A stretch of DNA of 64,000 nt from Magallana gigas (GCF_963853765.1 NC_088860.1:9796001-9860000); one strand, 5' to 3'. Shown: positions 14,789-53,700, numbered from the stretch's first letter. The notes: generated by a model not told the origin, from the sequence alone. A program made the numbers and translations.

Positions 14789-16774
14789 TTATGTTCTAAG
14801 ACTCGCAAATCAAATACATATAAAACATCGATACATGGTTACTAAAGAGCACTAATGAATCATTATGCATTGTATAATGCGTCTATGCTTATTGATTTAG
14901 ACGTTTCTACAAAGTGTGGTTCCTGTAATGATAAAGAAAGAAATATATGTATTTATATATTCTCTATTTATCTGTTAAACATAATATATTTCTAGGTATT
15001 AAGTGGCATGTTAAAAAATCAGTCTGGAGAGAAAAGGTGTTAGACTGATGAAAAAATTTTCATCGAGTAAATCGAAGTCTTTTCTTCTCATGTCACATTC
15101 AATCTATCTTGGTTTATGTAATTTTGTTGTGTCATTGGTGTAACATTGATAACTCGCATGTCTATGTACTATATATATAAGTCTTCTTGTATGGTAGATG
15201 TCACATATGGGCGAGAATCGACCGCCCAAAAGATTTTTACTATATTTTTTTTTCACATGAAAAGATTTGACTTCCGGGTCAATAAACTAAGTTATATTTT
15301 GCATGAAGTTGATATTGTTATGTTGCATGCTGACGTTTACATATTGTATATTAGTATAAGATCGTAAAATGTAACTTGTATCAAGCATGCAAAATTGCAC
15401 CACCATATATTTTGTTCTCAACGAGGAGAACCAAAGTCTATCCGCAAAGAGTTTTGCGACTTTTAATTTATTAATTACATGCATGTAGTTCTTAGTCAAG
15501 ACAATCCAGTTGTGAAATTTCTATTATAATAATCAATACATTTTCCTTAGAAAAATGTAATGGTTTTTTTCTTGTATTTTCCCCCTTTCTTTTGTAGTCT
15601 TTCTTCATATATCTTACACATGCCTCCGTAACGCTACTGCCATGCGAGGACGACAGACGGTTTCCACGTGTTTCACCACATTCAGTCACGATTCTTTAAA
15701 TGAAGAAAGGCTTTACTGTAACATGTGTTTGTATATGTTTTCCAATTATATCTACTTTTTAAAGAAATATACTTTATTTGTAATGTTCAAATACAGCTTT
15801 TATTATTATTGTGCATCTAGTTTTGCATGTCATAAATGAAGATACTTTTTATCTGTTTATAGATATATAATATTATTAATTTGTACAAGATATGTGTCTA
15901 CGACCTCAATGGAAACATCCTAACTTAACTTTGAAATTCCATATCGTCTGTTTCGCCCTTTCACAAGCGACAAATAGATATATAAAGAGTGAGATGAAAC
16001 GTCTAATTGTAATTACATTGTTAGGGAAGTTAAATGAACATATATATTGAGTGAACACGACGTTTAGACTATTGCTGAAAATCCCCATGGTGACATTTTA
16101 TATTGGTGTCCCCAAAGGATGTAATTGATATATTTGTATTCCTTGTTGGCATGCAAATGAAAAAAAAATTATCAGGGAAAATTGCAACACTGTGCTAAAT
16201 GATATCTTTGAAATTATAGTGCAGCTTATAACAGTTGAACGTTTAAAATTCAGTGTGCTTATATTTTACCCTCTCAATTCATAATATTATCTTTTGATCT
16301 TTGATATACTTCATTTAATTTTCGAATTAGAGTTTATATAACCCCGTTATCTTTCAGAGAGAACAAAATCTGATCAACTTATTAACAATCGGCTTGATCG
16401 AGATTTAAAAAAAAGTTCTAGAGAACTAAACAGGACATGAAGTACGAAGTGTTGCAACCTTCAACTTCAAACCATTCACTAATGGATTAACCCGTCCCTG
16501 ATAAGCATTATCCCAAAGTAAAACAACGTTATTTTTCTTTTGAAGTGATCTATTGTGATATTGGTAAACCTTTACTGTTCAAAAACATATACATACACTT
16601 AGTATGATACCCTACTGTTATCAATTGAAGCGAATAAATCCTGTTTATATTGGGGAAGTCGAACACCTCAAGAATGTCATGTAAAACGGGTCAATCAAAA
16701 TCTGAAAATAACAACTGAAAGGAGAGACCCCAAAAGGTCATTTATTGAACATTTCATCTGTAAAGCAACACCGA

Positions 16775-16776
<2 letters not shown>

Positions 16777-16836
<60 letters not shown>
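16777..16836. repeat. (TA)n microsatellite
   Basis: TA run. Confidence 0.98.
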
Positions 16837-16840
<4 letters not shown>

Positions 16841-18285
16841 TTAGGCATTTAAAACAGGTCTATATTTGTTGAAACTGTTTCCCGTAATTATTTTATATAT
16901 TTCTATTATTTGTATGGAGAATTTTATTTTCCCGTACTTAATGTATATCTTTATATTATGACGTCATAATCAATTCGGCTACATAACGTAACATAATACT
17001 AGCGTTTTATGACGTCACAATAAGAAATATGTATTCGTATGTACATGTATGTGTATTTGTGTAACTTAGCAACATGTTTTCAAACTCCTGAGATGTGTTC
17101 AGCAGAGAGAGTGCTCGCGAGCGATCGCCAAAATTTGTGTTTCGGAATTTTGGTGAGCGCTCGCTCTGTTGAACACGCCTCTGATGATTTAACGTAGCTC
17201 GCGGGTTTGCTGACGTCACAATAGGAATCGACGTAAAGAGTTGACCGTCATAGTAAACTCATAATTTTTTTTAAAAATGACAAATGAGATATTTAGAAGT
17301 TTAAAAGAAAATATTTTAGAAAGCTTATATGCGGTTTATGACTGTTTATACAAAGATTTATAATATCAAGTGCTGAAATTTTACAGATGTCACATACATT
17401 GTCATATTTTGTTCTATAAAGATAAAGAATGAGTGTCCGTTAGAACTCTTCCATTTAAAGTCATGTTTTAAAATAGAATGTATGCATTAACTTCGCTTTT
17501 TTTTTTACAATTATAACTTCCGTAATCTGTACTACCGATTAAATTCTTAAATTTCTTTTGGCTTGAGATAACTGTTTTATTCGATTACTTACTTATAATG
17601 TCAGTAGTTGCCTGGCATTTTATTTTTGCATTGATTGACTCAGAGTTTCATAAAAACAAAAATAGCAATTTTCTGTATCTTTACAGCCTTACATTAATTG
17701 CATTTGATAACATTCACAATAATGTCTAATAAGCATTTACATGTTCTAAAATGTGTTAAACAGCTAGTCTTGTCAATAAATGCATTTCAATTTTGGTGTT
17801 CTAAGAGGTAAGGAAATGATGACGTCAGGCTAACGTCGTAATGAAAATATAAGGTTTTGAGAAATCTTTTAAATCTTTAAAGTTTTTTTGCCAAAAATTG
17901 GCCGAGAACACATACTGATATTTTTTTATGAATTGATTCATAATTATCTCCTCGGTTTTTGTGTTGAGTATGATTAATTTCGTCTGAATCGTTTAAAAGT
18001 TTGGAGCATAGTTTTGTAATGCGTTTCTCGGTTAAAATGTGCATTTTACTATATATTTCATTGAAATGGCGTTGCTTGATTTTATTAATGACACTGTATT
18101 TGAAACACAATAACATAATTACCGCGCAGACGAATCTTAAATTTTAGAATTAAAACTATAAAACCTATGGATCACGTGGACAAATTTTCAAGGTAGGTTT
18201 TCTCGCAAGCAGGTAAACCCGCGAGCTACCTTAAAATGAAACTAGTTGAGTTTATTTCGGTGTTGTGATTTTTTTCATATAATAC

Positions 18286-18497
18286 NNNNNNNNNNNNNNN
18301 NNNNNNNNNNNNNNNNNNNNNNNNNNNNNNNNNNNNNNNNNNNNNNNNNNNNNNNNNNNNNNNNNNNNNNNNNNNNNNNNNNNNNNNNNNNNNNNNNNNN
18401 NNNNNNNNNNNNNNNNNNNNNNNNNNNNNNNNNNNNNNNNNNNNNNNNNNNNNNNNNNNNNNNNNNNNNNNNNNNNNNNNNNNNNNNNNNNNNNNNN
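18286..18497. other. Assembly gap (N run)
   Basis: 212 N. Confidence 1.
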
Positions 18498-24503: not shown

Positions 24504-24672
24504 NNNNNNNNNNNNNNNNNNNNNNNNNNNNNNNNNNNNNNNNNNNNNNNNNNNNNNNNNNNNNNNNNNNNNNNNNNNNNNNNNNNNNNNNNNNNNNNNN
24601 NNNNNNNNNNNNNNNNNNNNNNNNNNNNNNNNNNNNNNNNNNNNNNNNNNNNNNNNNNNNNNNNNNNNNNNN
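24504..24672. other. Assembly gap (N run)
   Basis: 169 N. Confidence 1.
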
Positions 24673-43235: not shown

Positions 43236-44795
43236 TTATGAATGATCACCTGGTAAAAGGTACAAAAATGTCATTTGAAAGAAAACCACAAGAACGTTGA
43301 TTTCTAGTACCACGTGAGCGGCTGCGCTGGACCCATCCTGTACACCAGTCATATTTCCCGTGAATGTTTTCGGTGTAGATGTCTTGGGAGAAAGGCATCC
43401 CTCTCGAGGACACGGTGGACAGTCACGGGGACGGTTTGGGTTTTCTGGGGCACACTCTGGGCGTGGCCTGCCTCCACCTCCTCCCCCGGACCCCGTTCCG
43501 GAGTTTACACAATGACAGAGGTAATAACTGTATCCATAGTTCTCCAGATTCCAATCTGTAAACGAACGTGAAGGAAATTTAAAATCAAATTGTAATAAAC
43601 TGGTTAGAACTGAGTCATGTAGATATTAACCTTGTCATTATCCATAGTGATATGAATCACAATCGGTTTGCTTAAGAAACAAAGGAGAAAATACTCATGA
43701 TCAGAGGATGTAAAAAATTTTAATACTAAAGAATGCTTTCTGCTGGAGAGCTGAGTTTTGCAAAAGAATGCATTGATGCGTATTTGAACTTACGTGTATT
43801 GTTCGAGGAACAGTTATACTGTGTCATTGTGTTTGGATTCACCACGCGTCCTTTGAAACATCCTAGATAATACGGAAATTTATCCGTCACATAATACCTG
43901 TAGCTCCCATTGACAACCTTCCCGTGACATTTTTCCAGCTCTGATTCCGTCACATTCTGCGACTCGCTCACCCTTGGTCCATAAATAGGAAACCCATCTA
44001 AAGCCACACCAATGAACTCTTCAACATCTCCCTTGTACATACAGCTCTCGGGAATCTTGTGATAGTGATAAGCCCCATCTGGACTCGCATGTCCATCACA
44101 TTTATCAAACACTTCGGGAGACGCCCCCTCTACGGCGTTAGACAAATCTCCCGCCAGAGGATTGTAGATGGCGACACCTGTTCTTGTGATCCCAATCATC
44201 CCTAATCCCACACAGCCCGGAACGGGCACTATTTCGGGAGTTTTGGGAATGGACAGGTTATAGTTCTTGGCTGTAGCGGTATTGGGGTTCACTTTCTCCG
44301 TTTCGTGATCAGGTAGACCACTGGCGGATATGTACAATCTAGGAATTAAACGGTAATTAATACACTGTATCATTATGCATTACATTTATCAAGTCTTTAT
44401 CAATATATTATTTGGAAACACCGTATTGCCCATTGTTAAGGATCTGGGTGATCAACAAATTATATAACTAATCGTAAGATCTGACTTAAACTGTGCTATA
44501 TAATAATTTTGGCCAATAAACTAACAAGAAAAAATCTTTAAATTTAGACATTTAACTTTCCTTTATCTTTAAACAGGGTACTTCTTCATAAGGATCGAGG
44601 TAATTATAGCCTTCAAAAGAAATCATGAAACCCTTACACAGCACTGTCACTCTCGTACACGGCGACCGAGGCACCATACTTCCCTGTGGCCTTGAACTGC
44701 ACGATCTCTTCCCTCGTTAGTCCAGCTGAGGAGAGGACCATAAGACTTGGACCTAAAGCCATTAGGACAAATATCCAAATGGTTGCGCTCCTCAT
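43236..44795 (-). CDS. YHYH-domain secreted, probably GPI-anchored protein, copy 1 (340 aa); exons 44795-44638, 44338-43794, 43555-43236
   Basis: GT-AG introns, phases 2 and 1, 1023 nt open. N-terminal MRSATIWIFVLMALGPSLMVLSSA signal; DKCDGHASPDGAYHYH and IGVALDGFPIYGP motifs of the YHYH family; Gly run, CAPENPNRPRDCPPCPREGC, Thr-rich stalk and a hydrophobic C-terminus. Confidence 0.88.
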
Positions 44796-47700
44796 ATCTT
44801 ATATTTCCCTACAAAAAGCGAACACAACTCAACTGTAGTACGAAATACAGAAAACATCTTTAACTTGATCTTCCACGTGTACAGTCGACTAAATATACAT
44901 TGTGTAAAGCAATTTACTTGGTGTACAATTTTATGGTATCTCTACAGATATGGCAAAATGAAAGACTTATTTTATTTTAATCTTCTCGGTGATTCTTTTT
45001 CATTAATTTCTTATATATGACATAGAAAGTAAATGAAACATCAGGTATTAACAAGCAGGCTGACGGACATAAATAGTTTGAAATATTACTGTATTTGCGC
45101 TTTACAAAACCTTCCGTTACTATAGTCGTTTTTTTTTTCAAATAGATTTTGTTGATTAAATAATATAACATTTAAATCTAAGAAAGTACATATTAGAATA
45201 GCTATAACGTTTATGAAAATGTTAAATTTAGAGAATTACACTGGTATTCAAATTGTTTTGCTTCTTACAAAATCACCGCCAAAAAACTGAAACAACCCTA
45301 ACGTGCTCTATTTTTACACCATGACGTTATATTGTCAGCTCCAAACAAACAAACAAACAAAACGATCGGTTAATATTTTGATGTATACAACATACTCATT
45401 AAATAAAGTAAGTCCAAATATGCCTTTCACAGATTACAATGTAGTTCCAGTGACTCCAAGAATATATAGTCCCCAGACTATCGAGACAGAGGTTATGCAA
45501 CCAGTCACAACAGATGCACGACTCTAGGACGTGCCCTGGGACCGTAGGAGGGATGTCCGTCTTTATTTTAACAAATATCCGCCACCATGTGCACAAAATG
45601 TTTCAGGAAATTCGAGATTCTATCAGTTATTACGTATATATATATTATGTCAGGTTGGTTTTCAGTTGTCAACTTATTTTGATACAAAGAAACTCAATAC
45701 TAGTATAGTATTAAGGAATGTTTTTATCCAGATTGAAAAGTACTTCCCAAAAAATTCTTTAATGTGCATGGATTGTAACAGCGGCAGGTTTTTATTTTCT
45801 CGCTACCTAGATCTACATGATTGTATTTGATACTCCAAGCCTTAAAGATTTTCAAAAACGTCACGACACAGATATGATCCGTATTTAAATGTATACGAGG
45901 GGATTTTGCCATTCATCAAAAACGTACCTAAAGATACGTGATGTAAAAATAAAATCATATACAAACTAAATACACAGAACAAGAAAAACGTCCTTAGTTA
46001 ATATATACTCACTGAAATAAATTGTAGCCATAAGTTGAGTTATTTACAAGAAATTGTCCATATGTTTAAAATCTTGTTTCAATTCAAAGAAAATTGACTT
46101 ACCAAGAGAAAATACGTATTGGGACTGACTTCTGATCGGTCAAAACATTAATTTCATTACGTATACCCGTCGAAATGTTAAATTTGGAATTAACTTGTGC
46201 AAGGTTATACATCGGTATGCATAACTATCATTTTTTTTTACTAGCATGTTTATTCCTGTGTTGACCTATCGCTAACCAGTGATTGAGAAAACATGCGAGG
46301 TCCGATTTGATTGCGTTATATACTATAGTGCTTTGAAAAAAGAAGGGCACACACGATTTCAATAAACAAAAACCAATATATCTCATCACAAACCAATTTT
46401 TTTAAGATATCTCTTAAAATCAAGATATTAGTACACTAACCTTCTTGGTGGAATCTCTGAATTCATTGTTTATAATAATATATAAGATCGACAAACTGCT
46501 AAACTTAGAACTAGAAAAGAACACCTTAATTCGACGAACAATGGGGTGAGGGGAAGGGTGCAGCACAATATATTAAGATACTGGTGAAGCATCATAAGAT
46601 ATGGGCAAAAAACAAAGCAGTAAAGACAAGATAGTGCCTAGATCATGGATAATGGTCGACCCATGATGATATGCCTAAAGGAATGAAAATAACACTCACC
46701 GAAAAGAATAAGAATACAGTAATAGGAGGAGATGAAAAAGACTCCAAGCCATGTATAATAGAGTATAGTAAATATACATACACAGAAACAATAGCAAAAT
46801 AGGAAGTAAGCAGTGGAACACTAATTAACCGTACAACAAATGTAACGGTTGACAGGCATAGCTCATCACCGAGTCTACCCTTTAAGATTAATAATAAATA
46901 TATACAACGATTTGGGCAGTAAAACCTAAGGTCAAATAACAAGCGAACAGTTAGAGCACACCCCAGATGTTTGCCAGTGCAAAAATGGATGGAATGTCAT
47001 AAAAAACAAACAAACAAACCAACAAAACAAAAAAAATAAAGAAAAAAACAACCAAAAAAAAACTCCAACAAAAACACCAAGAAACATAACGTATGTAAAG
47101 AGCTGTGTATTTATTTTCTTTGATACATATTCTTTATAATATCAAAATAATAGTGCCTTTTTTTCCTAAACATATTCATAAAAAAACCCAGCTTCCAACC
47201 AGTTTTAAGGTTTTAGAGAACTCAACAACACATGGAAACAATATATACCTTCTTTCCTTTGTAAAATTATTTGTAAATCAATTAATTGGGTGTGAAATAT
47301 AATCTGTTTTACGGTATCTTTTCCTAATTAGCTATAGAGTTTAGAAGTTACATATAAGTCCTGTTAGTTATTGTCAAGAGGAATTAAAATAATTTACGAG
47401 CCAACATTGAAAACTTTGTCATGAATTGTATAGTAATTTAGGCTTCCTTAGTTACCTCACGTTATGTTCAAATAAACCAATCTAGAGGTATCGTAATGTC
47501 CCTGTTCCGAAGAATCTTAATAAAATGTTAGTTACATGTACATTGATGTTGTCAGGAATTTTTTTTTTTTATCAAATTAAGGATTTCAAGCCCATATTTT
47601 AAACTAAAATTCCTTTGATTTGAATTTGAAATTGAAGGGTTAAATTTTATTTTCACGATTAATATTGTCCTATCTTGTTTGATTATCTAAGGAAGTCTTT

Positions 47701-50700
47701 TACAGTTTTGATATGATGTACACTTTCATACGCGTACAATTCTATTGCTGTGTTGTAACATCTTATGATTCTGTATCCACTAATAATGTAAAGAATCCTG
47801 ACCATTCATGATGTGGTTTTGCCATTAACGAACTACCTAGCCGTTCATTAACTATTCATAATGTGAATATGAAGAGAAATGAGGAACAACATACAATTTG
47901 TATCAAGCTACACGTTTACACACGGTTACATCTGCTGTCCCACTGATCCATTCTAAATGTCACAAGACCAAAGTCAATAAAATGTATGAATAAAAAATGA
48001 CCATTGGTTCATAGACCTTATATGATTTTTGCAAAAATAAATCATGACATTATGCTTTTGTGTTCATTTCATGAACATTTAAAAACACAAAGAAAAAAAC
48101 ATGCATGTTGGTTGATTTATTACGCTTATTTTCCGTTTAGGTACTGATTGAAAATACATGTAAAATAAACTCATGCTATAAAGAAAAGATACATTAATGA
48201 ACAAACCGAGCATTTTGATAGGACTGTTCCGTTACATATTCAGCTTGATCGAATTTCTGTTTTTTACTTCTAAATGATTTGAGATAACATCCTATTGATT
48301 TTGCACTTGAACAGTTATCACAATCATACAGTCACGTATATATTAAGTATACAACATGTTATATCAACTGTTCCTGAACACACCGACAAAACTCTTAATT
48401 CATTTTGGACTGATTAATCATCTGGTAAAAAGTACCAAAAATGCCACTTGAAAGAAGAACACGATGACTCCGATCTCTTGTACCACGTGACCGGCTGCGT
48501 TGGACCCATCCTCAACGCCAGTGATATTCCTCAATGGTGTTGTTGGTGTGGGCGTCGTGGAAGGGGGACATCCCTCTCGAGGGCACGGTGGACAGTCTCG
48601 GGGACGGTTTGGATTTTCTGGGGCACATTCTGGGCGTGGTCCACCCCCGCCTCCCCCTCCCCCGGGCCCCATTCCGGAGTTTTCACAATGACAGAGGTAA
48701 TAACTGTATCCATAATTCTCCAGATTCCAATCTGTAAACGATTTTGAAGTGAACCGTCATCAAATGTTTTGAAACTTTAATAATAAGTGCAGACTTAGTA
48801 ATAACTTAAAGGTTCTTTTATTTTAGATTACAAAGAAACACACGTGCATGTACATGTTGTAAAAACAAGTTAATGCAGTTTACAATAATGTGTCAATACA
48901 CTGTCAGATTTTTTTCATTATTTTTACAAAAAGTTTTTTTTCAGACCAATTTAATTAAAACCAATGTATTCAATAGATTGAAAACTGATTACTGCTGGAA
49001 AACTTCGCTTTGCTAATCAAATGAACTTACGTGTATTGTTCGAGGAACAGTTATACTGTGTCATTGTGTTTGGATTCACCACGCGTCCTTTGAAACATCC
49101 TAGATAATACGGAAATTTACCCGTCACATAATACCTATAGCTCCCATTGACAACCTTCCCGTGACATTTGTCCAGCTCTGATTCCGTCACATTCTGCGAC
49201 TCGCTTACCCTCGGTCCATAAATAGGAAACCCATCTAAAGCCACGACAATGAACTCTTCAACTTCTCCCTTGTACATACAGCTCTCGGGAATCTTGTGAT
49301 AGTGATAAGCTCCACCTGGACTCGCATGTCCATCACATTTATCAAATACTTCGGGAGACGCCCCCTCTACGGCGTTAGACAAATCTCCCGCCAGAGGATT
49401 GTAGATGGCAACACCGGTTCTTGTGATCCCAATCATCCCTAATCCTACACAGCCAGGGACGGACACTATTTCGGGAACTTTTGGAATAGACACATTATAG
49501 TTTTGGGCTGTAGCGGTATTGGGGTTCACTTTCTCCGTTTCGTGATCAGGTAGACCACTGGCGGATATGTACAATCTAGGAATTAAACGGTAATTAATAC
49601 ACTGTATCATTATGCATTACATTTATCAAGTCTTTATCAATATATTATTTGGAAACACCGTATTGCCCATTGTTAAGGATCTGGGTGATCAACAAATTAT
49701 ATAACTAATCGTAAGATCTGACTTAAACTGTGCTATATAATAATTTTGGCCAATAAACTAACAAGAAAAAATCTTTAAATTTAGACATTTAACTTTCCTT
49801 TATCTTTAAACAGGGTACTTCTTCATAAGGATCGAGGTAATTATAGCCTTCAAAAGAAATCATGAAACCCTTACACAGCACTGTCACTCTCGTACACGGC
49901 GACCGAGGCACCATACTTCCCTGTGGCCTTGAACTGCACGATCTCTTCCCTCGTTAGTCCAGCTGAGGAGAGGACCATAAGACTTGGACCTAAAGCCATT
50001 AGGACAAATATCCAAATGGTTGCGCTCCTCATATCTTATATTTCCCTACAAAAAGCGAACACAACTCAACTGTAGTACGAAATACAGAAAACATCTTTAA
50101 CTTGATCTTCCACGTGTACAGTCGACTAAATATACATTGTGTAAAGCAATTTACTTGGTGTACAATTTTATGGTATCTCTACAGATATGGCAAAATGAAA
50201 GACTTATTTTATTTTAATCTTCTCGGTGATTCTTTTTCATTAATTTCTTATATATGACATAGAAAGTAAATGAAACATCAGGTATTAACAAGCAGGCTGA
50301 CGGACATAAATAGTTTGAAATATTACTGTATTTGCGCTTTACAAAACCTTCCGTTACTATAGTCGTTTTTTTTTTCAAATAGATTTTGTTGATTAAATAA
50401 TATAACATTTAAATCTAAGAAAGTACATATTAGAATAGCTATAACGTTTATGAAAATGTTAAATTTAGAGAATTACACTGGTATTCAAATTGTTTTGCTT
50501 CTTACAAAATCACCGCCAAAAAACTGAAACAACCCTAACGTGCTCTATTTTTACACCATGACGTTATATTGTCAGCTCCAAACAAACAAACAAACAAAAC
50601 GATCGGTTAATATTTTGATGTATACAACATACTCATTAAATAAAGTAAGTCCAAATATGCCTTTCACAGATTACAATGTAGTTCCAGTGACTCCAAGAAT

Positions 50701-53700
50701 ATATAGTCCCCAGACTATCGAGACAGAGGTTATGCAACCAGTCACAACAGATGCACGACTCTAGGACGTGCCCTGGGACCGTAGGAGGGATGTCCGTCTT
50801 TATTTTAACAAATATCCGCCACCATGTGCACAAAATGTTTCAGGAAATTCGAGATTCTATCAGTTATTACGTATATATATATTATGTCAGGTTGGTTTTC
50901 AGTTGTCAACTTATTTTGATACAAAGAAACTCAATACTAGTATAGTATTAAGGAATGTTTTTATCCAGATTGAAAAGTACTTCCCAAAAAATTCTTTAAT
51001 GTGCATGGATTGTAACAGCGGCAGGTTTTTATTTTCTCGCTACCTAGATCTACATGATTGTATTTGATACTCCAAGCCTTAAAGATTTTCAAAAACGTCA
51101 CGACACAGATATGATCCGTATTTAAATGTATACGAGGGGATTTTGCCATTCATCAAAAACGTACCTAAAGATACGTGATGTAAAAATAAAATCATATACA
51201 AACTAAATACACAGAACAAGAAAAACGTCCTTAGTTAATATATACTCACTGAAATAAATTGTAGCCATAAGTTGAGTTATTTACAAGAAATTGTCCATAT
51301 GTTTAAAATCTTGTTTCAATTCAAAGAAAATTGACTTACCAAGAGAAAATACGTATTGGGACTGACTTCTGATCGGTCAAAACATTAATTTCATTACGTA
51401 TACCCGTCGAAATGTTAAATTTGGAATTAACTTGTGCAAGGTTATACATCGGTATGCATAACTATCATTTTTTTTTACTAGCATGTTTATTCCTGTGTTG
51501 ACCTATCGCTAACCAGTGATTGAGAAAACATGCGAGGTCCGATTTGATTGCGTTATATACTATAGTGCTTTGAAAAAAGAAGGGCACACACGATTTCAAT
51601 AAACAAAAACCAATATATCTCATCACAAACCAATTTTTTTAAGATATCTCTTAAAATCAAGATATTAGTACACTAACCTTCTTGGTGGAATCTCTGAATT
51701 CATTGTTTATAATAATATATAAGATCGACAAACTGCTAAACTTAGAACTAGAAAAGAACACCTTAATTCGACGAACAATGGGGTGAGGGGAAGGGTGCAG
51801 CACAATATATTAAGATACTGGTGAAGCATCATAAGATATGGGCAAAAAACAAAGCAGTAAAGACAAGATAGTGCCTAGATCATGGATAATGGTCGACCCA
51901 TGATGATATGCCTAAAGGAATGAAAATAACACTCACCGAAAAGAATAAGAATACAGTAATAGGAGGAGATGAAAAAGACTCCAAGCCATGTATAATAGAG
52001 TATAGTAAATATACATACACAGAAACAATAGCAAAATAGGAAGTAAGCAGTGGAACACTAATTAACCGTACAACAAATGTAACGGTTGACAGGCATAGCT
52101 CATCACCGAGTCTACCCTTTAAGATTAATAATAAATATATACAACGATTTGGGCAGTAAAACCTAAGGTCAAATAACAAGCGAACAGTTAGAGCACACCC
52201 CAGATGTTTGCCAGTGCAAAAATGGATGGAATGTCATAAAAAACAAACAAACAAACCAACAAAACAAAAAAAATAAAGAAAAAAACAACCAAAAAAAAAC
52301 TCCAACAAAAACACCAAGAAACATAACGTATGTAAAGAGCTGTGTATTTATTTTCTTTGATACATATTCTTTATAATATCAAAATAATAGTGCCTTTTTT
52401 TCCTAAACATATTCATAAAAAAACCCAGCTTCCAACCAGTTTTAAGGTTTTAGAGAACTCAACAACACATGGAAACAATATATACCTTCTTTCCTTTGTA
52501 AAATTATTTGTAAATCAATTAATTGGGTGTGAAATATAATCTGTTTTACGGTATCTTTTCCTAATTAGCTATAGAGTTTAGAAGTTACATATAAGTCCTG
52601 TTAGTTATTGTCAAGAGGAATTAAAATAATTTACGAGCCAACATTGAAAACTTTGTCATGAATTGTATAGTAATTTAGGCTTCCTTAGTTACCTCACGTT
52701 ATGTTCAAATAAACCAATCTAGAGGTATCGTAATGTCCCTGTTCCGAAGAATCTTAATAAAATGTTAGTTACATGTACATTGATGTTGTCAGGAATTTTT
52801 TTTTTTTATCAAATTAAGGATTTCAAGCCCATATTTTAAACTAAAATTCCTTTGATTTGAATTTGAAATTGAAGGGTTAAATTTTATTTTCACGATTAAT
52901 ATTGTCCTATCTTGTTTGATTATCTAAGGAAGTCTTTTACAGTTTTGATATGATGTACACTTTCATACGCGTACAATTCTATTGCTGTGTTGTAACATCT
53001 TATGATTCTGTATCCACTAATAATGTAAAGAATCCTGACCATTCATGATGTGGTTTTGCCATTAACGAACTACCTAGCCGTTCATTAACTATTCATAATG
53101 TGAATATGAAGAGAAATGAGGAACAACATACAATTTGTATCAAGCTACACGTTTACACACGGTTACATCTGCTGTCCCACTGATCCATTCTAAATGTCAC
53201 AAGACCAAAGTCAATAAAATGTATGAATAAAAAATGACCATTGGTTCATAGACCTTATATGATTTTTGCAAAAATAAATCATGACATTATGCTTTTGTGT
53301 TCATTTCATGAACATTTAAAAACACAAAGAAAAAAACATGCATGTTGGTTGATTTATTACGCTTATTTTCCGTTTAGGTACTGATTGAAAATACATGTAA
53401 AATAAACTCATGCTATAAAGAAAAGATACATTAATGAACAAACCGAGCATTTTGATAGGACTGTTCCGTTACATATTCAGCTTGATCGAATTTCTGTTTT
53501 TTACTTCTAAATGATTTGAGATAACATCCTATTGATTTTGCACTTGAACAGTTATCACAATCATACAGTCACGTATATATTAAGTATACAACATGTTATA
53601 TCAACTGTTCCTGAACACACCGACAAAACTCTTAATTCATTTTGGACTGATTAATCATCTGGTAAAAAGTACCAAAAATGCCACTTGAAAGAAGAACACG

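What the first reader, a model, noticed from the sequence alone, without database searches (positions are those of the whole stretch)
49506..49526. Chimeric YHYH gene formed at a 21-bp crossover window (unequal crossing-over signature)
Seen: on the + strand to the right of 49506, copy 2 matches copy 1 (exon 1, intron 1, promoter). To the left of 49526 it matches copy 3 (rest of exon 2, exon 3). The switch lies inside the shared GGCTGTAGCGGTATTGGGGTT (44269-44289 = 49506-49526 = 54743-54763). Diagnostic bases: 44266 C and 44268 T (copy 1) versus 49503 T and 49505 G; 49527 C versus 54764 T (copy 3). Inference: non-allelic homologous recombination between two older paralogs created a third, hybrid gene with the copy-1 promoter and signal peptide and the copy-3 catalytic and anchor part. 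Near-100% identity means a very recent event or a copy-number polymorphism. A haplotype-stitching assembly artefact would look the same.
Basis: partly seen in the sequence, partly recalled or inferred. Interest (0 to 1): 0.7.

Follow-up and report, generated by a model that had tools for sequence, protein, structure and literature searches.

The report
Recent unequal-crossover hybrid oyster YHYH gene
In the Pacific oyster reference genome, two old neighbouring genes for a secreted, probably metal-binding protein recombined out of register very recently. This made a perfect 5.2-kb tandem duplication with a hybrid third gene in the middle; the event is real in the sequenced animal but is an ordinary, textbook kind of event.

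Summary
Window 44269-49526 equals 49506-54763 at an offset of 5,237 bp, with a single mismatch.

The genome is Magallana (Crassostrea) gigas xbMagGiga1.1. All three genes are intact three-exon YHYH-domain (PF14240) genes on the minus strand.

The sister species C. angulata has only two such genes about 5 kb apart. Both window units map to the same angulata interval, so the three-gene state is derived.

Contigs built from raw reads of the best-matching public run (X1) break exactly at 49526 and 49506. Depth arithmetic reveals a perfect 39-bp contig (49497-49535) across the chimeric junction, at half the depth of its two-copy flanks. The junction is therefore in reads and was not invented by the assembler.

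Two other studies' contigs run through the copy-1 junction unbroken, and no other public protein model is chimeric. The duplication is probably rare or private.

The only difference between the units is G163V in the hybrid gene, at a glycine conserved in 111 of 111 homologues.

Verdict: this is a real, very recent homology-mediated duplication of the "anti-Lepore" type. It is a new instance of a known kind and of modest interest. "Catalytic" is only a prediction for this uncharacterised domain.

The parts
49506..49526 (.). Crossover window in the hybrid gene c2: a 21-bp tract identical in all three copies. It encodes NPNTATA, at nt 50-70 of exon 2.
44269..44289 (.). The same 21-mer in parental copy 1 (junction type 1L-1R).
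54743..54763 (.). The same 21-mer in parental copy 3 (junction type 3L-3R).
44290..49526 (.). Duplication unit 1 (5,237 bp). It holds the c1 5' part (49 nt of exon 2, intron 1, exon 1), a 3.6-kb intergenic spacer, and c2 exon 3, intron 2 and most of exon 2.
49527..54763 (.). Duplication unit 2, identical to unit 1 except at 49246/54483.
43236..44795 (-). Copy 1 (c1), a parental YHYH gene of 340 aa. Exons are 44638-44795, 43794-44338 and 43236-43555, with GT-AG introns of 299 and 238 nt.
   Evidence: 4 mismatches to XP_011453859.1 (LOC105346835)
48418..50032 (-). Copy 2 (c2), the hybrid YHYH gene of 338 aa. Exons are 49875-50032, 49031-49575 and 48418-48731, with introns of 299 and 299 nt. It is identical to RefSeq XP_065924359.1.
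53655..58587 (-). Copy 3 (c3), a parental YHYH gene of 338 aa. Exons are 58430-58587, 54268-54812 and 53655-53968. Intron 1 is 3,617 nt. It is identical to XP_065924361.1 / XP_034329218.2 (LOC105346834).
49022..49505 (.). Exon-2 homology block left of the crossover. It is 97% identical to copy 1 (43785-44268) and, apart from 49246, identical to copy 3 (54259-54742). This block is the recombination substrate.
49246..49246 (-). The only difference between the two units: GGC to GTC, giving G163V in c2. The glycine is invariant in 111/111 homologues and lies in the G-x-A-x-D-G-F-P-I-Y-G motif.
49497..49535 (.). Chimera-specific 39-bp contig (nine 31-mers) in run X1 at depth 18.5. It is inferred exactly from the depth tables; it covers 49503 T, 49505 G, 49527 C and 49531 T, and no variant letter is listed at any of them.
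   Evidence: tables 2, 3, 8

Best explanation
The ancestral locus held two diverged YHYH paralogues in tandem on the minus strand, about 5.2 kb apart: c1 and c3, with overall dS of about 0.29. In the lineage of the sequenced Pacific oyster, the 545-bp exon 2 of c3 paired out of register with exon 2 of c1. The partner was most likely a sister chromatid or a nearly identical chromosome. The exchange resolved inside a 21-bp identity tract 50-70 nt into the exon. The duplication product carries c1, spacer, hybrid c2, spacer, c3. The hybrid has c1's upstream region, exon 1 (signal peptide), intron 1 and the first 16 codons of exon 2. These are joined in frame to c3's YHYH core, Pro/Gly-rich stalk and C-terminal hydrophobic anchor. 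The event is very recent: there is 1 difference in 5,237 bp, whereas other individuals differ at roughly 0.5-1.3% here. It is probably rare or private to this haplotype. Shown: the sequence pattern, the derived state relative to C. angulata, intact reading frames, and junction k-mers in reads. Inferred: the exact recombination pathway, the promoter swap, expression, and any functional effect of G163V.
For: 1) Perfect 5,237-bp periodicity with one mismatch, and a switch point bracketed by diagnostic bases. 2) All three genes are intact with GT-AG introns, and the chimera is in frame. 3) The C. angulata orthologous locus L011 has only two YHYH genes, c3-like at 10664-12387 and c1-like at 15824-17354. 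Window units 45140-49581 and 50377-55013 both align to the same angulata interval. 4) In run X1, full-length contigs end at 49526 and begin at 49506. Total depth is 55.8 at 49503/49505 but 37.3 at 49494. The bin depths 48.3 and 47.4 are reproduced exactly by adding a contig of depth 18.5 at 49497-49535. No variant letters are reported at 49503-49531. At the 98% threshold a 39-mer must match perfectly, so 3L-1R 31-mers exist in the reads, at half the depth of 3L (37.3) and 1R (35.2), as the assembled structure predicts. 5) The assembly was made from 48x HiFi reads with hifiasm (PMC11267148). HiFi reads are generally longer than a 5.2-kb unit (my knowledge; read lengths were not retrieved). No N run lies near the duplication, and no other high-identity copy exists elsewhere in the assembly. 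6) Only this assembly's own model (P0121) combines a c1-type N side with a c3-type C side among about 40 public proteins. The older annotations seen list two loci.
Against: The DNA runs were available only as contigs, so there is no true read depth and no long read spanning the 10.5 kb. The junction contig was not in the printed list; it was deduced from depth arithmetic and branch positions. X1 matches the window perfectly over 1.9 kb apart from two positions that carry copy-1-type letters. It is therefore probably the assembly's own individual, which makes it independent of the assembler but not of the animal. Runs X5 and X9 show no junction-2 branch, so the population status is unknown. No expression data were obtained (RNA run X21 laid 0 reads). 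A meiotic crossover cannot be told apart from a replication-based template switch.
Confidence: 0.8

Rival explanations
1. Assembly artefact: the true genome has only c1 and c3, and the assembler falsely expanded the locus by joining c3 exon 2 to c1 exon 2 through their 97% similarity.
For: The two units are identical except at one site, as a false expansion would give. The older annotations seen and C. angulata show two genes. Contigs of X5 and X9 show no chimeric branch. The assembly needed heavy curation, with 68 haplotypic duplications removed.
Against: A perfect junction-spanning 39-mer is present in read-derived contigs of X1 at depth 18.5, half of each two-copy flank. The contigs break exactly at 49526 and 49506, which happens only if 3L continues into both 1R and 3R. 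Haplotype stitching in an oyster would give about 1% divergence between units, not 1 in 5,237. No gap lies near the region.
Confidence: 0.1
2. A real duplication, but made by a replication-based template switch (BIR or MMBIR from a broken fork using the paralogue as template) rather than a classical reciprocal crossover.
For: The switch lies at the far edge of the homology block. To its right there is about 81% identity for only about 70 bp, and then the introns are unalignable. The 21-bp tract is far from the longest identity tract available (98, 62 and 47 bp tracts exist). The near-identity of the units suggests a sister-chromatid or intra-chromosomal event.
Against: The sequence outcome is identical to NAHR. 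There are no inserted bases or template-switch scars at the junction. The 480 bp of 97% identity on one side is an adequate substrate for homologous recombination.
Confidence: 0.08
3. There is no third copy. The junction k-mers come from a gene-converted allele of c1 (c3-type exon 2 tract) on the other haplotype, and the assembler merged the alleles into a tandem array.
For: Paralogue gene conversion seems active at this locus. Exon-2 core dS is 0.16 versus 0.29-0.49 in exons 1 and 3, and shared states are mosaic among gigas and angulata copies.
Against: This model predicts a 3L:junction-2 depth ratio of 3:1, but the observed ratio is 2.0 (37.3 to 18.5). It also does not explain the 4.7 kb of identical intron and intergenic sequence to the left of c2.
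Confidence: 0.02

Closest known systems
Anti-Lepore haemoglobin chromosomes (delta, beta-delta hybrid, beta) and other unequal-crossover duplication products (established knowledge, not tested here)
   Same: Two tandem paralogues misalign and exchange within coding homology. The duplication product keeps both parents and adds an in-frame hybrid between them, with unit length equal to the paralogue spacing.
   Different: This is an oyster YHYH gene pair. The crossover lies in a 21-bp tract at the edge of a single-exon homology block. The reciprocal (Lepore-type) deletion allele has not been seen.
CYP11B1/CYP11B2 chimeric gene of glucocorticoid-remediable aldosteronism (established knowledge)
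   Same: The hybrid joins one paralogue's 5' regulatory region and first exon(s) to the other's coding body, so a promoter swap is the expected consequence.
   Different: No expression or phenotype data exist here. The hybrid also carries a probably damaging G163V.
Pfam PF14240 YHYH domain family
   Same: All three proteins match the family (E = 8e-21 for c2). They keep the conserved D131, H136, Y-H-Y-H 143-146, D167-G168 and D188.
   Different: The family is mostly bacterial and phage-encoded and has not been characterised. The oyster proteins add a signal peptide, a Gly/Pro/Thr-rich stalk and a C-terminal hydrophobic anchor. c2 has lost the invariant G163.
Gene presence-absence and copy-number variation in bivalves (e.g. 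Mytilus pan-genome, PMC7653742)
   Same: A gene copy is present in one individual's genome and not evident in others.
   Different: Here the mechanism and the exact breakpoint can be read to within 21 bp. Population frequency was not measured.

Membership tests
NAHR / unequal-crossover tandem duplication with a hybrid gene | The ancestral state has two direct paralogous repeats at the unit spacing | tested here: met
   C. angulata locus L011 has two YHYH genes about 5.0 kb apart, and both window units map to that one interval.
NAHR / unequal-crossover tandem duplication with a hybrid gene | The junction is in register within the homologous sequence, with no inserted or deleted bases | tested here: met
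   The switch lies inside a shared 21-mer, the frame is preserved and the 338-aa ORF is intact.
NAHR / unequal-crossover tandem duplication with a hybrid gene | The hybrid carries one parent's sequence on one side and the other parent's on the other, across all diagnostic sites | tested here: met
   25 of 25 left-side sites are c3-type and all right-side sites are c1-type. At protein level, 12 of 12 N-side and 35 of 35 C-side diagnostic residues agree.
NAHR / unequal-crossover tandem duplication with a hybrid gene | The junction is present in raw sequencing data at copy-equivalent depth | tested here: met
   An inferred 39-bp junction contig of depth 18.5 sits between flanks of 37.3 and 35.2 in run X1. 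The data are contigs only, and probably come from the same individual.
NAHR / unequal-crossover tandem duplication with a hybrid gene | Single molecules span the whole array, or there is 2x depth over the unit | not testable with these tools
NAHR / unequal-crossover tandem duplication with a hybrid gene | A reciprocal deletion allele (1L-3R hybrid) exists in the population | not tested
   A degenerate junction pattern found nothing in JGI metagenome contigs. No oyster population data could be searched.
Pfam PF14240 (YHYH) | The HMM match is above the gathering threshold | tested here: met
   75.3 bits against a cut-off of 25 for the c2 exon 2 ORF. All three copies are over the cut-off in the six-frame genome search.
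Pfam PF14240 (YHYH) | The conserved His triad, Asp and YHYH motif are present | tested here: met
   D131, H136, H144 and H146 lie in columns conserved in at least 99% of 111 homologues, and all three copies keep them.
Pfam PF14240 (YHYH) | Zn binding or hydrolase activity (predicted in PMC7824862 and in bioRxiv 10.64898/2026.10.18.759936) | not testable with these tools
   No member has been characterised experimentally. There is no PDB relative by sequence or fold.
GPI-anchored or type I surface protein | An N-terminal signal peptide and a C-terminal hydrophobic tail preceded by small residues | tested here: inconclusive
   Read by eye from the translations: MRSATIWIFVLMALGPSLMVLSSA at the N terminus, and GSNAAG...GVIVFFFQVAFLVLFTR at the C terminus. 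No predictor was available.

The most novel reading that the evidence does not exclude
The hybrid may be a segregating, transcribed allele in Pacific oysters that puts the c3-type YHYH ectodomain under c1's regulatory region. Its only post-duplication change removes a universally conserved glycine. That would be a caught-in-the-act case of gene birth followed at once by functional decay or dosage compensation, in a metazoan branch of an enigmatic, structurally unsolved, predicted Zn-hydrolase family that is otherwise bacterial and phage-encoded.
Probability: 0.2. Interest if true: 0.4.

Novelty: new member of a known kind. Interest (0 to 1): 0.27.

Why it matters
This is a clean example of how tandem gene families grow by unequal exchange in a highly polymorphic bivalve genome, with the breakpoint resolved to 21 bp and an outgroup confirming the ancestral state. 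It provides a specific 39-bp marker (window 49497-49535) for genotyping a copy-number variant in oyster resequencing data. It also shows that a suspicious perfect duplication in the reference assembly is supported by reads. The biology of the gene itself is unknown: it has a secreted or anchored YHYH domain with no solved fold and only a predicted metal site. The functional consequences are therefore speculative and the general significance is modest.

Tried and rejected
- Raw-read RNA run X21 laid 0 reads on 48300-50200, so it is no test of expression.
- True depth or copy number could not be measured, because every DNA run was available only as contigs. Mean word depths were used only for ratios within X1.
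- X5 and X9 show copy-1-type contigs running through the junction. This suggests absence of the chimera, but contigs prove presence only.
- An exact look-up of the c2 exon-2 ORF in public assemblies found nothing on record.
- A degenerate junction pattern scanned against JGI metagenome contigs gave 0 hits.
- The PDB was searched by sequence, by Foldseek (best E = 4.9) and by VIA-align wide (no Z of 2 or more). No relative of the YHYH model was found, although the model has pLDDT 91.5.
- A search of earlier scan findings by words returned nothing relevant.
- An older three-gene array homogenised by gene conversion was considered and rejected. It would need a 5.2-kb conversion tract that includes the intergenic DNA, and C. 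angulata has two genes.

Full report
**Observation**

A direct-repeat scan and an offset comparison show a tandem structure with a period of 5,237 bp. Window 44269-49526 is identical to 49506-54763 except at one position: 49246 is A and 54483 is C.

To the left of 44269, copy 1 differs from copies 2 and 3 at 25 sites within 43785-44268, which is 97% identity. These sites include 44266 C and 44268 T against 49503 T and 49505 G. To the right of 49526, copy 2 is identical to copy 1. It differs from copy 3 at 49527, 49531, 49536, 49539, 49542 and onward, and similarity is lost after about 70 bp.

A degenerate 48-nt pattern across the site matches exactly three places in the window. They are the three junction types 1L-1R, 3L-1R and 3L-3R, and none is expected by chance.

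**What the genes are**

The genome is the Pacific oyster Magallana (Crassostrea) gigas, assembly xbMagGiga1.1.
- It has 563,985,803 bases in 29 scaffolds, and the window lies on C8.
- The genome note reports 564.0 Mb in 29 scaffolds, 48x HiFi coverage, hifiasm, purge_dups and manual curation (PMC11267148).

Each copy is a three-exon gene on the minus strand with canonical GT-AG introns and an intact frame:

| Copy | Span | Protein | Note |
|---|---|---|---|
| c1 | 43236-44795 | 340 aa | parental |
| c2 | 48418-50032 | 338 aa | hybrid |
| c3 | 53655-58587 | 338 aa | parental; intron 1 is 3,617 nt against 299 nt in c1 and c2 |

- Exon 2 carries a Pfam YHYH domain (PF14240, E = 8e-21).
- Exon 1 encodes a signal-peptide-like N terminus.
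- Exon 3 encodes a Gly/Pro/Thr-rich stretch and a terminal hydrophobic tail. This looks like a GPI or TM anchor by eye and was not tested.
- c2 is identical to RefSeq XP_065924359.1. c3 is identical to XP_065924361.1 and XP_034329218.2 (LOC105346834). c1 is closest to LOC105346835.
- The genome has only one other PF14240 match, on C4.
- c1 and c3 are old paralogues, with dN 0.076 and dS 0.29 overall. The exon-2 core is less diverged (dS 0.16) than exons 1 and 3 (dS 0.29 and 0.49). This fits purifying selection plus some past gene conversion.

**Direction of the event**

The orthologous locus of the sister species C. angulata was fetched as L011 (GCA_025612915.2). It holds only two YHYH genes: a c3-like gene at 10664-12387 and a c1-like gene at 15824-17354, about 5.0 kb apart. 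Window units 45140-49581 and 50377-55013 both align to the same angulata interval.

The older M. gigas protein records seen here name two loci, LOC105346834 and LOC105346835. Among about 40 public protein models and Logan-derived proteins in the relevant clusters, only this assembly's own model combines a c1-type N side (12 of 12 diagnostic residues) with a c3-type C side (35 of 35). The three-gene state is therefore derived, and c2 is the new gene.

**Real or artefact**

The look-up of sequencing runs returned oyster runs. Four of them were laid on 48300-50200 at 98% likeness.

Run X1 is the best holder. Its contigs match the window perfectly except at 49120 and 49347, which carry copy-1-type letters.
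- Two full-length contigs end at 49526 and begin at 49506. In a k=31 graph these are exactly the positions where the 3L path must branch (C or T at 49527) and where the 1R path must branch (G or T at 49505), provided all three junction types are present. With only c1 and c3, both paths would run through unbroken.
- Table 3 gives a total depth of 55.8 at 49503 and 49505 but 37.3 at 49494.
- The bin depths 48.3 (49452-49515) and 47.4 (49516-79) are reproduced exactly by adding one unlisted contig of depth 18.5 covering 49497-49535. The sums are 37.3 + 35.2 x 10/64 + 18.5 x 19/64 = 48.3, and 35.2 + 37.3 x 11/64 + 18.5 x 20/64 = 47.4.
- That span is the predicted junction-2-specific unitig of nine 31-mers. 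At a 98% threshold a 39-mer must match perfectly, and no variant letters are listed at 49503-49531.

So 31-mers that join c3-type left bases to c1-type right bases are present in reads. Their depth is half that of the 3L (37.3) and 1R (35.2) contigs, as the assembled c1-c2-c3 structure predicts. A gene-converted c1 allele without a third copy would give a 3L-to-junction ratio of 3:1, not 2:1.

X1 is probably the assembly's own animal. This evidence is therefore independent of the assembler but not of the individual.

In runs X5 and X9, from other studies, copy-1-type contigs (49494 G, 49503 C, 49505 T) run through the junction without a break. This suggests that those animals lack the chimera, although contigs cannot prove absence.

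Other points also weigh against stitching:
- No N run lies near the region; the only runs are at 18286-18497 and 24504-24672.
- No other high-identity copy of the region exists elsewhere in the assembly.
- HiFi reads are generally longer than a 5.2-kb unit (my knowledge; read lengths were not retrieved).
- The two units differ at 1 of 5,237 sites, whereas other individuals' contigs differ from the window at roughly 0.5-1.3% here. Two stitched haplotypes would be expected to differ far more.

I put the duplication as real in the sequenced animal at about 0.8-0.85.

**Mechanism**

The only in-register homology between c1 and c3 is exon 2 plus a few flanking bases, about 560 bp. The neighbouring introns are unalignable or differ in length.

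The switch lies in a 21-bp identity tract 50-70 nt into exon 2, near the 5' edge of the homology. Longer tracts of 98, 62 and 47 bp exist further 3'.

The product is the duplication ("anti-Lepore") outcome of an unequal exchange. The near-identity of the units points to a sister-chromatid or intra-chromosomal partner and a very recent date. A replication-based template switch (BIR-like) would leave the same sequence and cannot be excluded. Finding the reciprocal 1L-3R deletion allele would favour a crossover.

**Consequences**

By position, c2 inherits c1's 3.6-kb upstream region, exon 1, intron 1 and 16 codons of exon 2, and c3's remainder. At protein level it differs from c3 at 12 N-terminal residues and at G163V.

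G163V is the sole difference between the units. It changes a glycine that is invariant in 111 of 111 homologues from bacteria to animals, four residues before the invariant D-G of the G-x-A-x-D-G-F-P-I-Y-G motif, in a core strand of a confident model (pLDDT 91.5). A random single change in the unit would hit one of the 16 residues conserved at 99% or more non-synonymously only about 0.7% of the time. With a sample of one this is only suggestive of relaxed constraint or inactivation of the new copy.

**Function of the family**

The YHYH domain has not been characterised. A comparative study predicts a Zn-binding His triad plus Asp and a hydrolase role (PMC7824862). A 2026 preprint also predicts a three-histidine Zn site in a YHYH family member and notes the family lacks metal-binding and enzymatic characterisation (10.64898/2026.10.18.759936). 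The model made here finds no PDB relative by sequence or fold.

**Verdict**

The artefact alternative is disfavoured but not excluded without long reads. This is a new, well-resolved instance of a textbook mechanism, in a genome where earlier notes of this scan record another perfect recent tandem duplication. Interest is modest.

Noticed in passing
window 55013-58253 (within c3 intron 1); minisatellite 56756-57613: c3 intron 1 is 3,617 nt, against about 400 nt in the C. angulata orthologue. The extra ~3.2 kb has no counterpart in L011 and contains a 41-copy, 21-bp minisatellite (consensus ATTTTACAGATTAAAGTGTGA). It is possibly a repeat-bearing mobile element insertion.
   Followed up: partly
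c2 model residues 1-181 (window 49032-49574, minus strand): The YHYH domain folds with high confidence (pLDDT 91.5, pTM 0.87) into a mostly beta structure. It has no detectable relative among solved structures (Foldseek best E 4.9; VIA-align no Z of 2 or more).
   Followed up: partly
protein hits: Animal YHYH proteins appear patchily: bivalves (Crassostrea, Saccostrea, Mytilus, Ylistrum), a nemertean (Lineus) and an ascidian (Styela). The next hits are bacterial, at about 36-44% identity. This could reflect ancient horizontal acquisition or widespread loss.
   Followed up: no
L011 10001-30959 (C. angulata) and UniProt K1RS98: Public gene models XP_052704694.1 (926 aa) and K1RS98 (864 aa) fuse YHYH and NF-YA (CBFB_NFYA) sequence. 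They are probably annotation merges of neighbouring genes.
   Followed up: no
exon 2 coding positions 82-166 (window about 54647-54731 in c3, 49410-49494 in c2): The c3/c2 exon 2 of this individual carries a cluster of about 12 substitutions within 85 nt. They are absent from c1 and from both C. angulata genes, which share the other state. The cause could be a converted tract from an unsampled donor or a fast-evolving patch.
   Followed up: partly
window 18286-18497 and 24504-24672: There are two N runs of 212 and 169 bases. They are gaps or masked stretches, are unrelated to the duplication, and were left untouched.
   Followed up: no
window 49120 and 49347 in run X1 contigs: X1 contigs carry copy-1-type letters (T and C) at two sites inside otherwise c2/c3-type exon-2 contigs. 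These are either graph-simplification mosaics among the three near-identical copies or real conversion variants.
   Followed up: no
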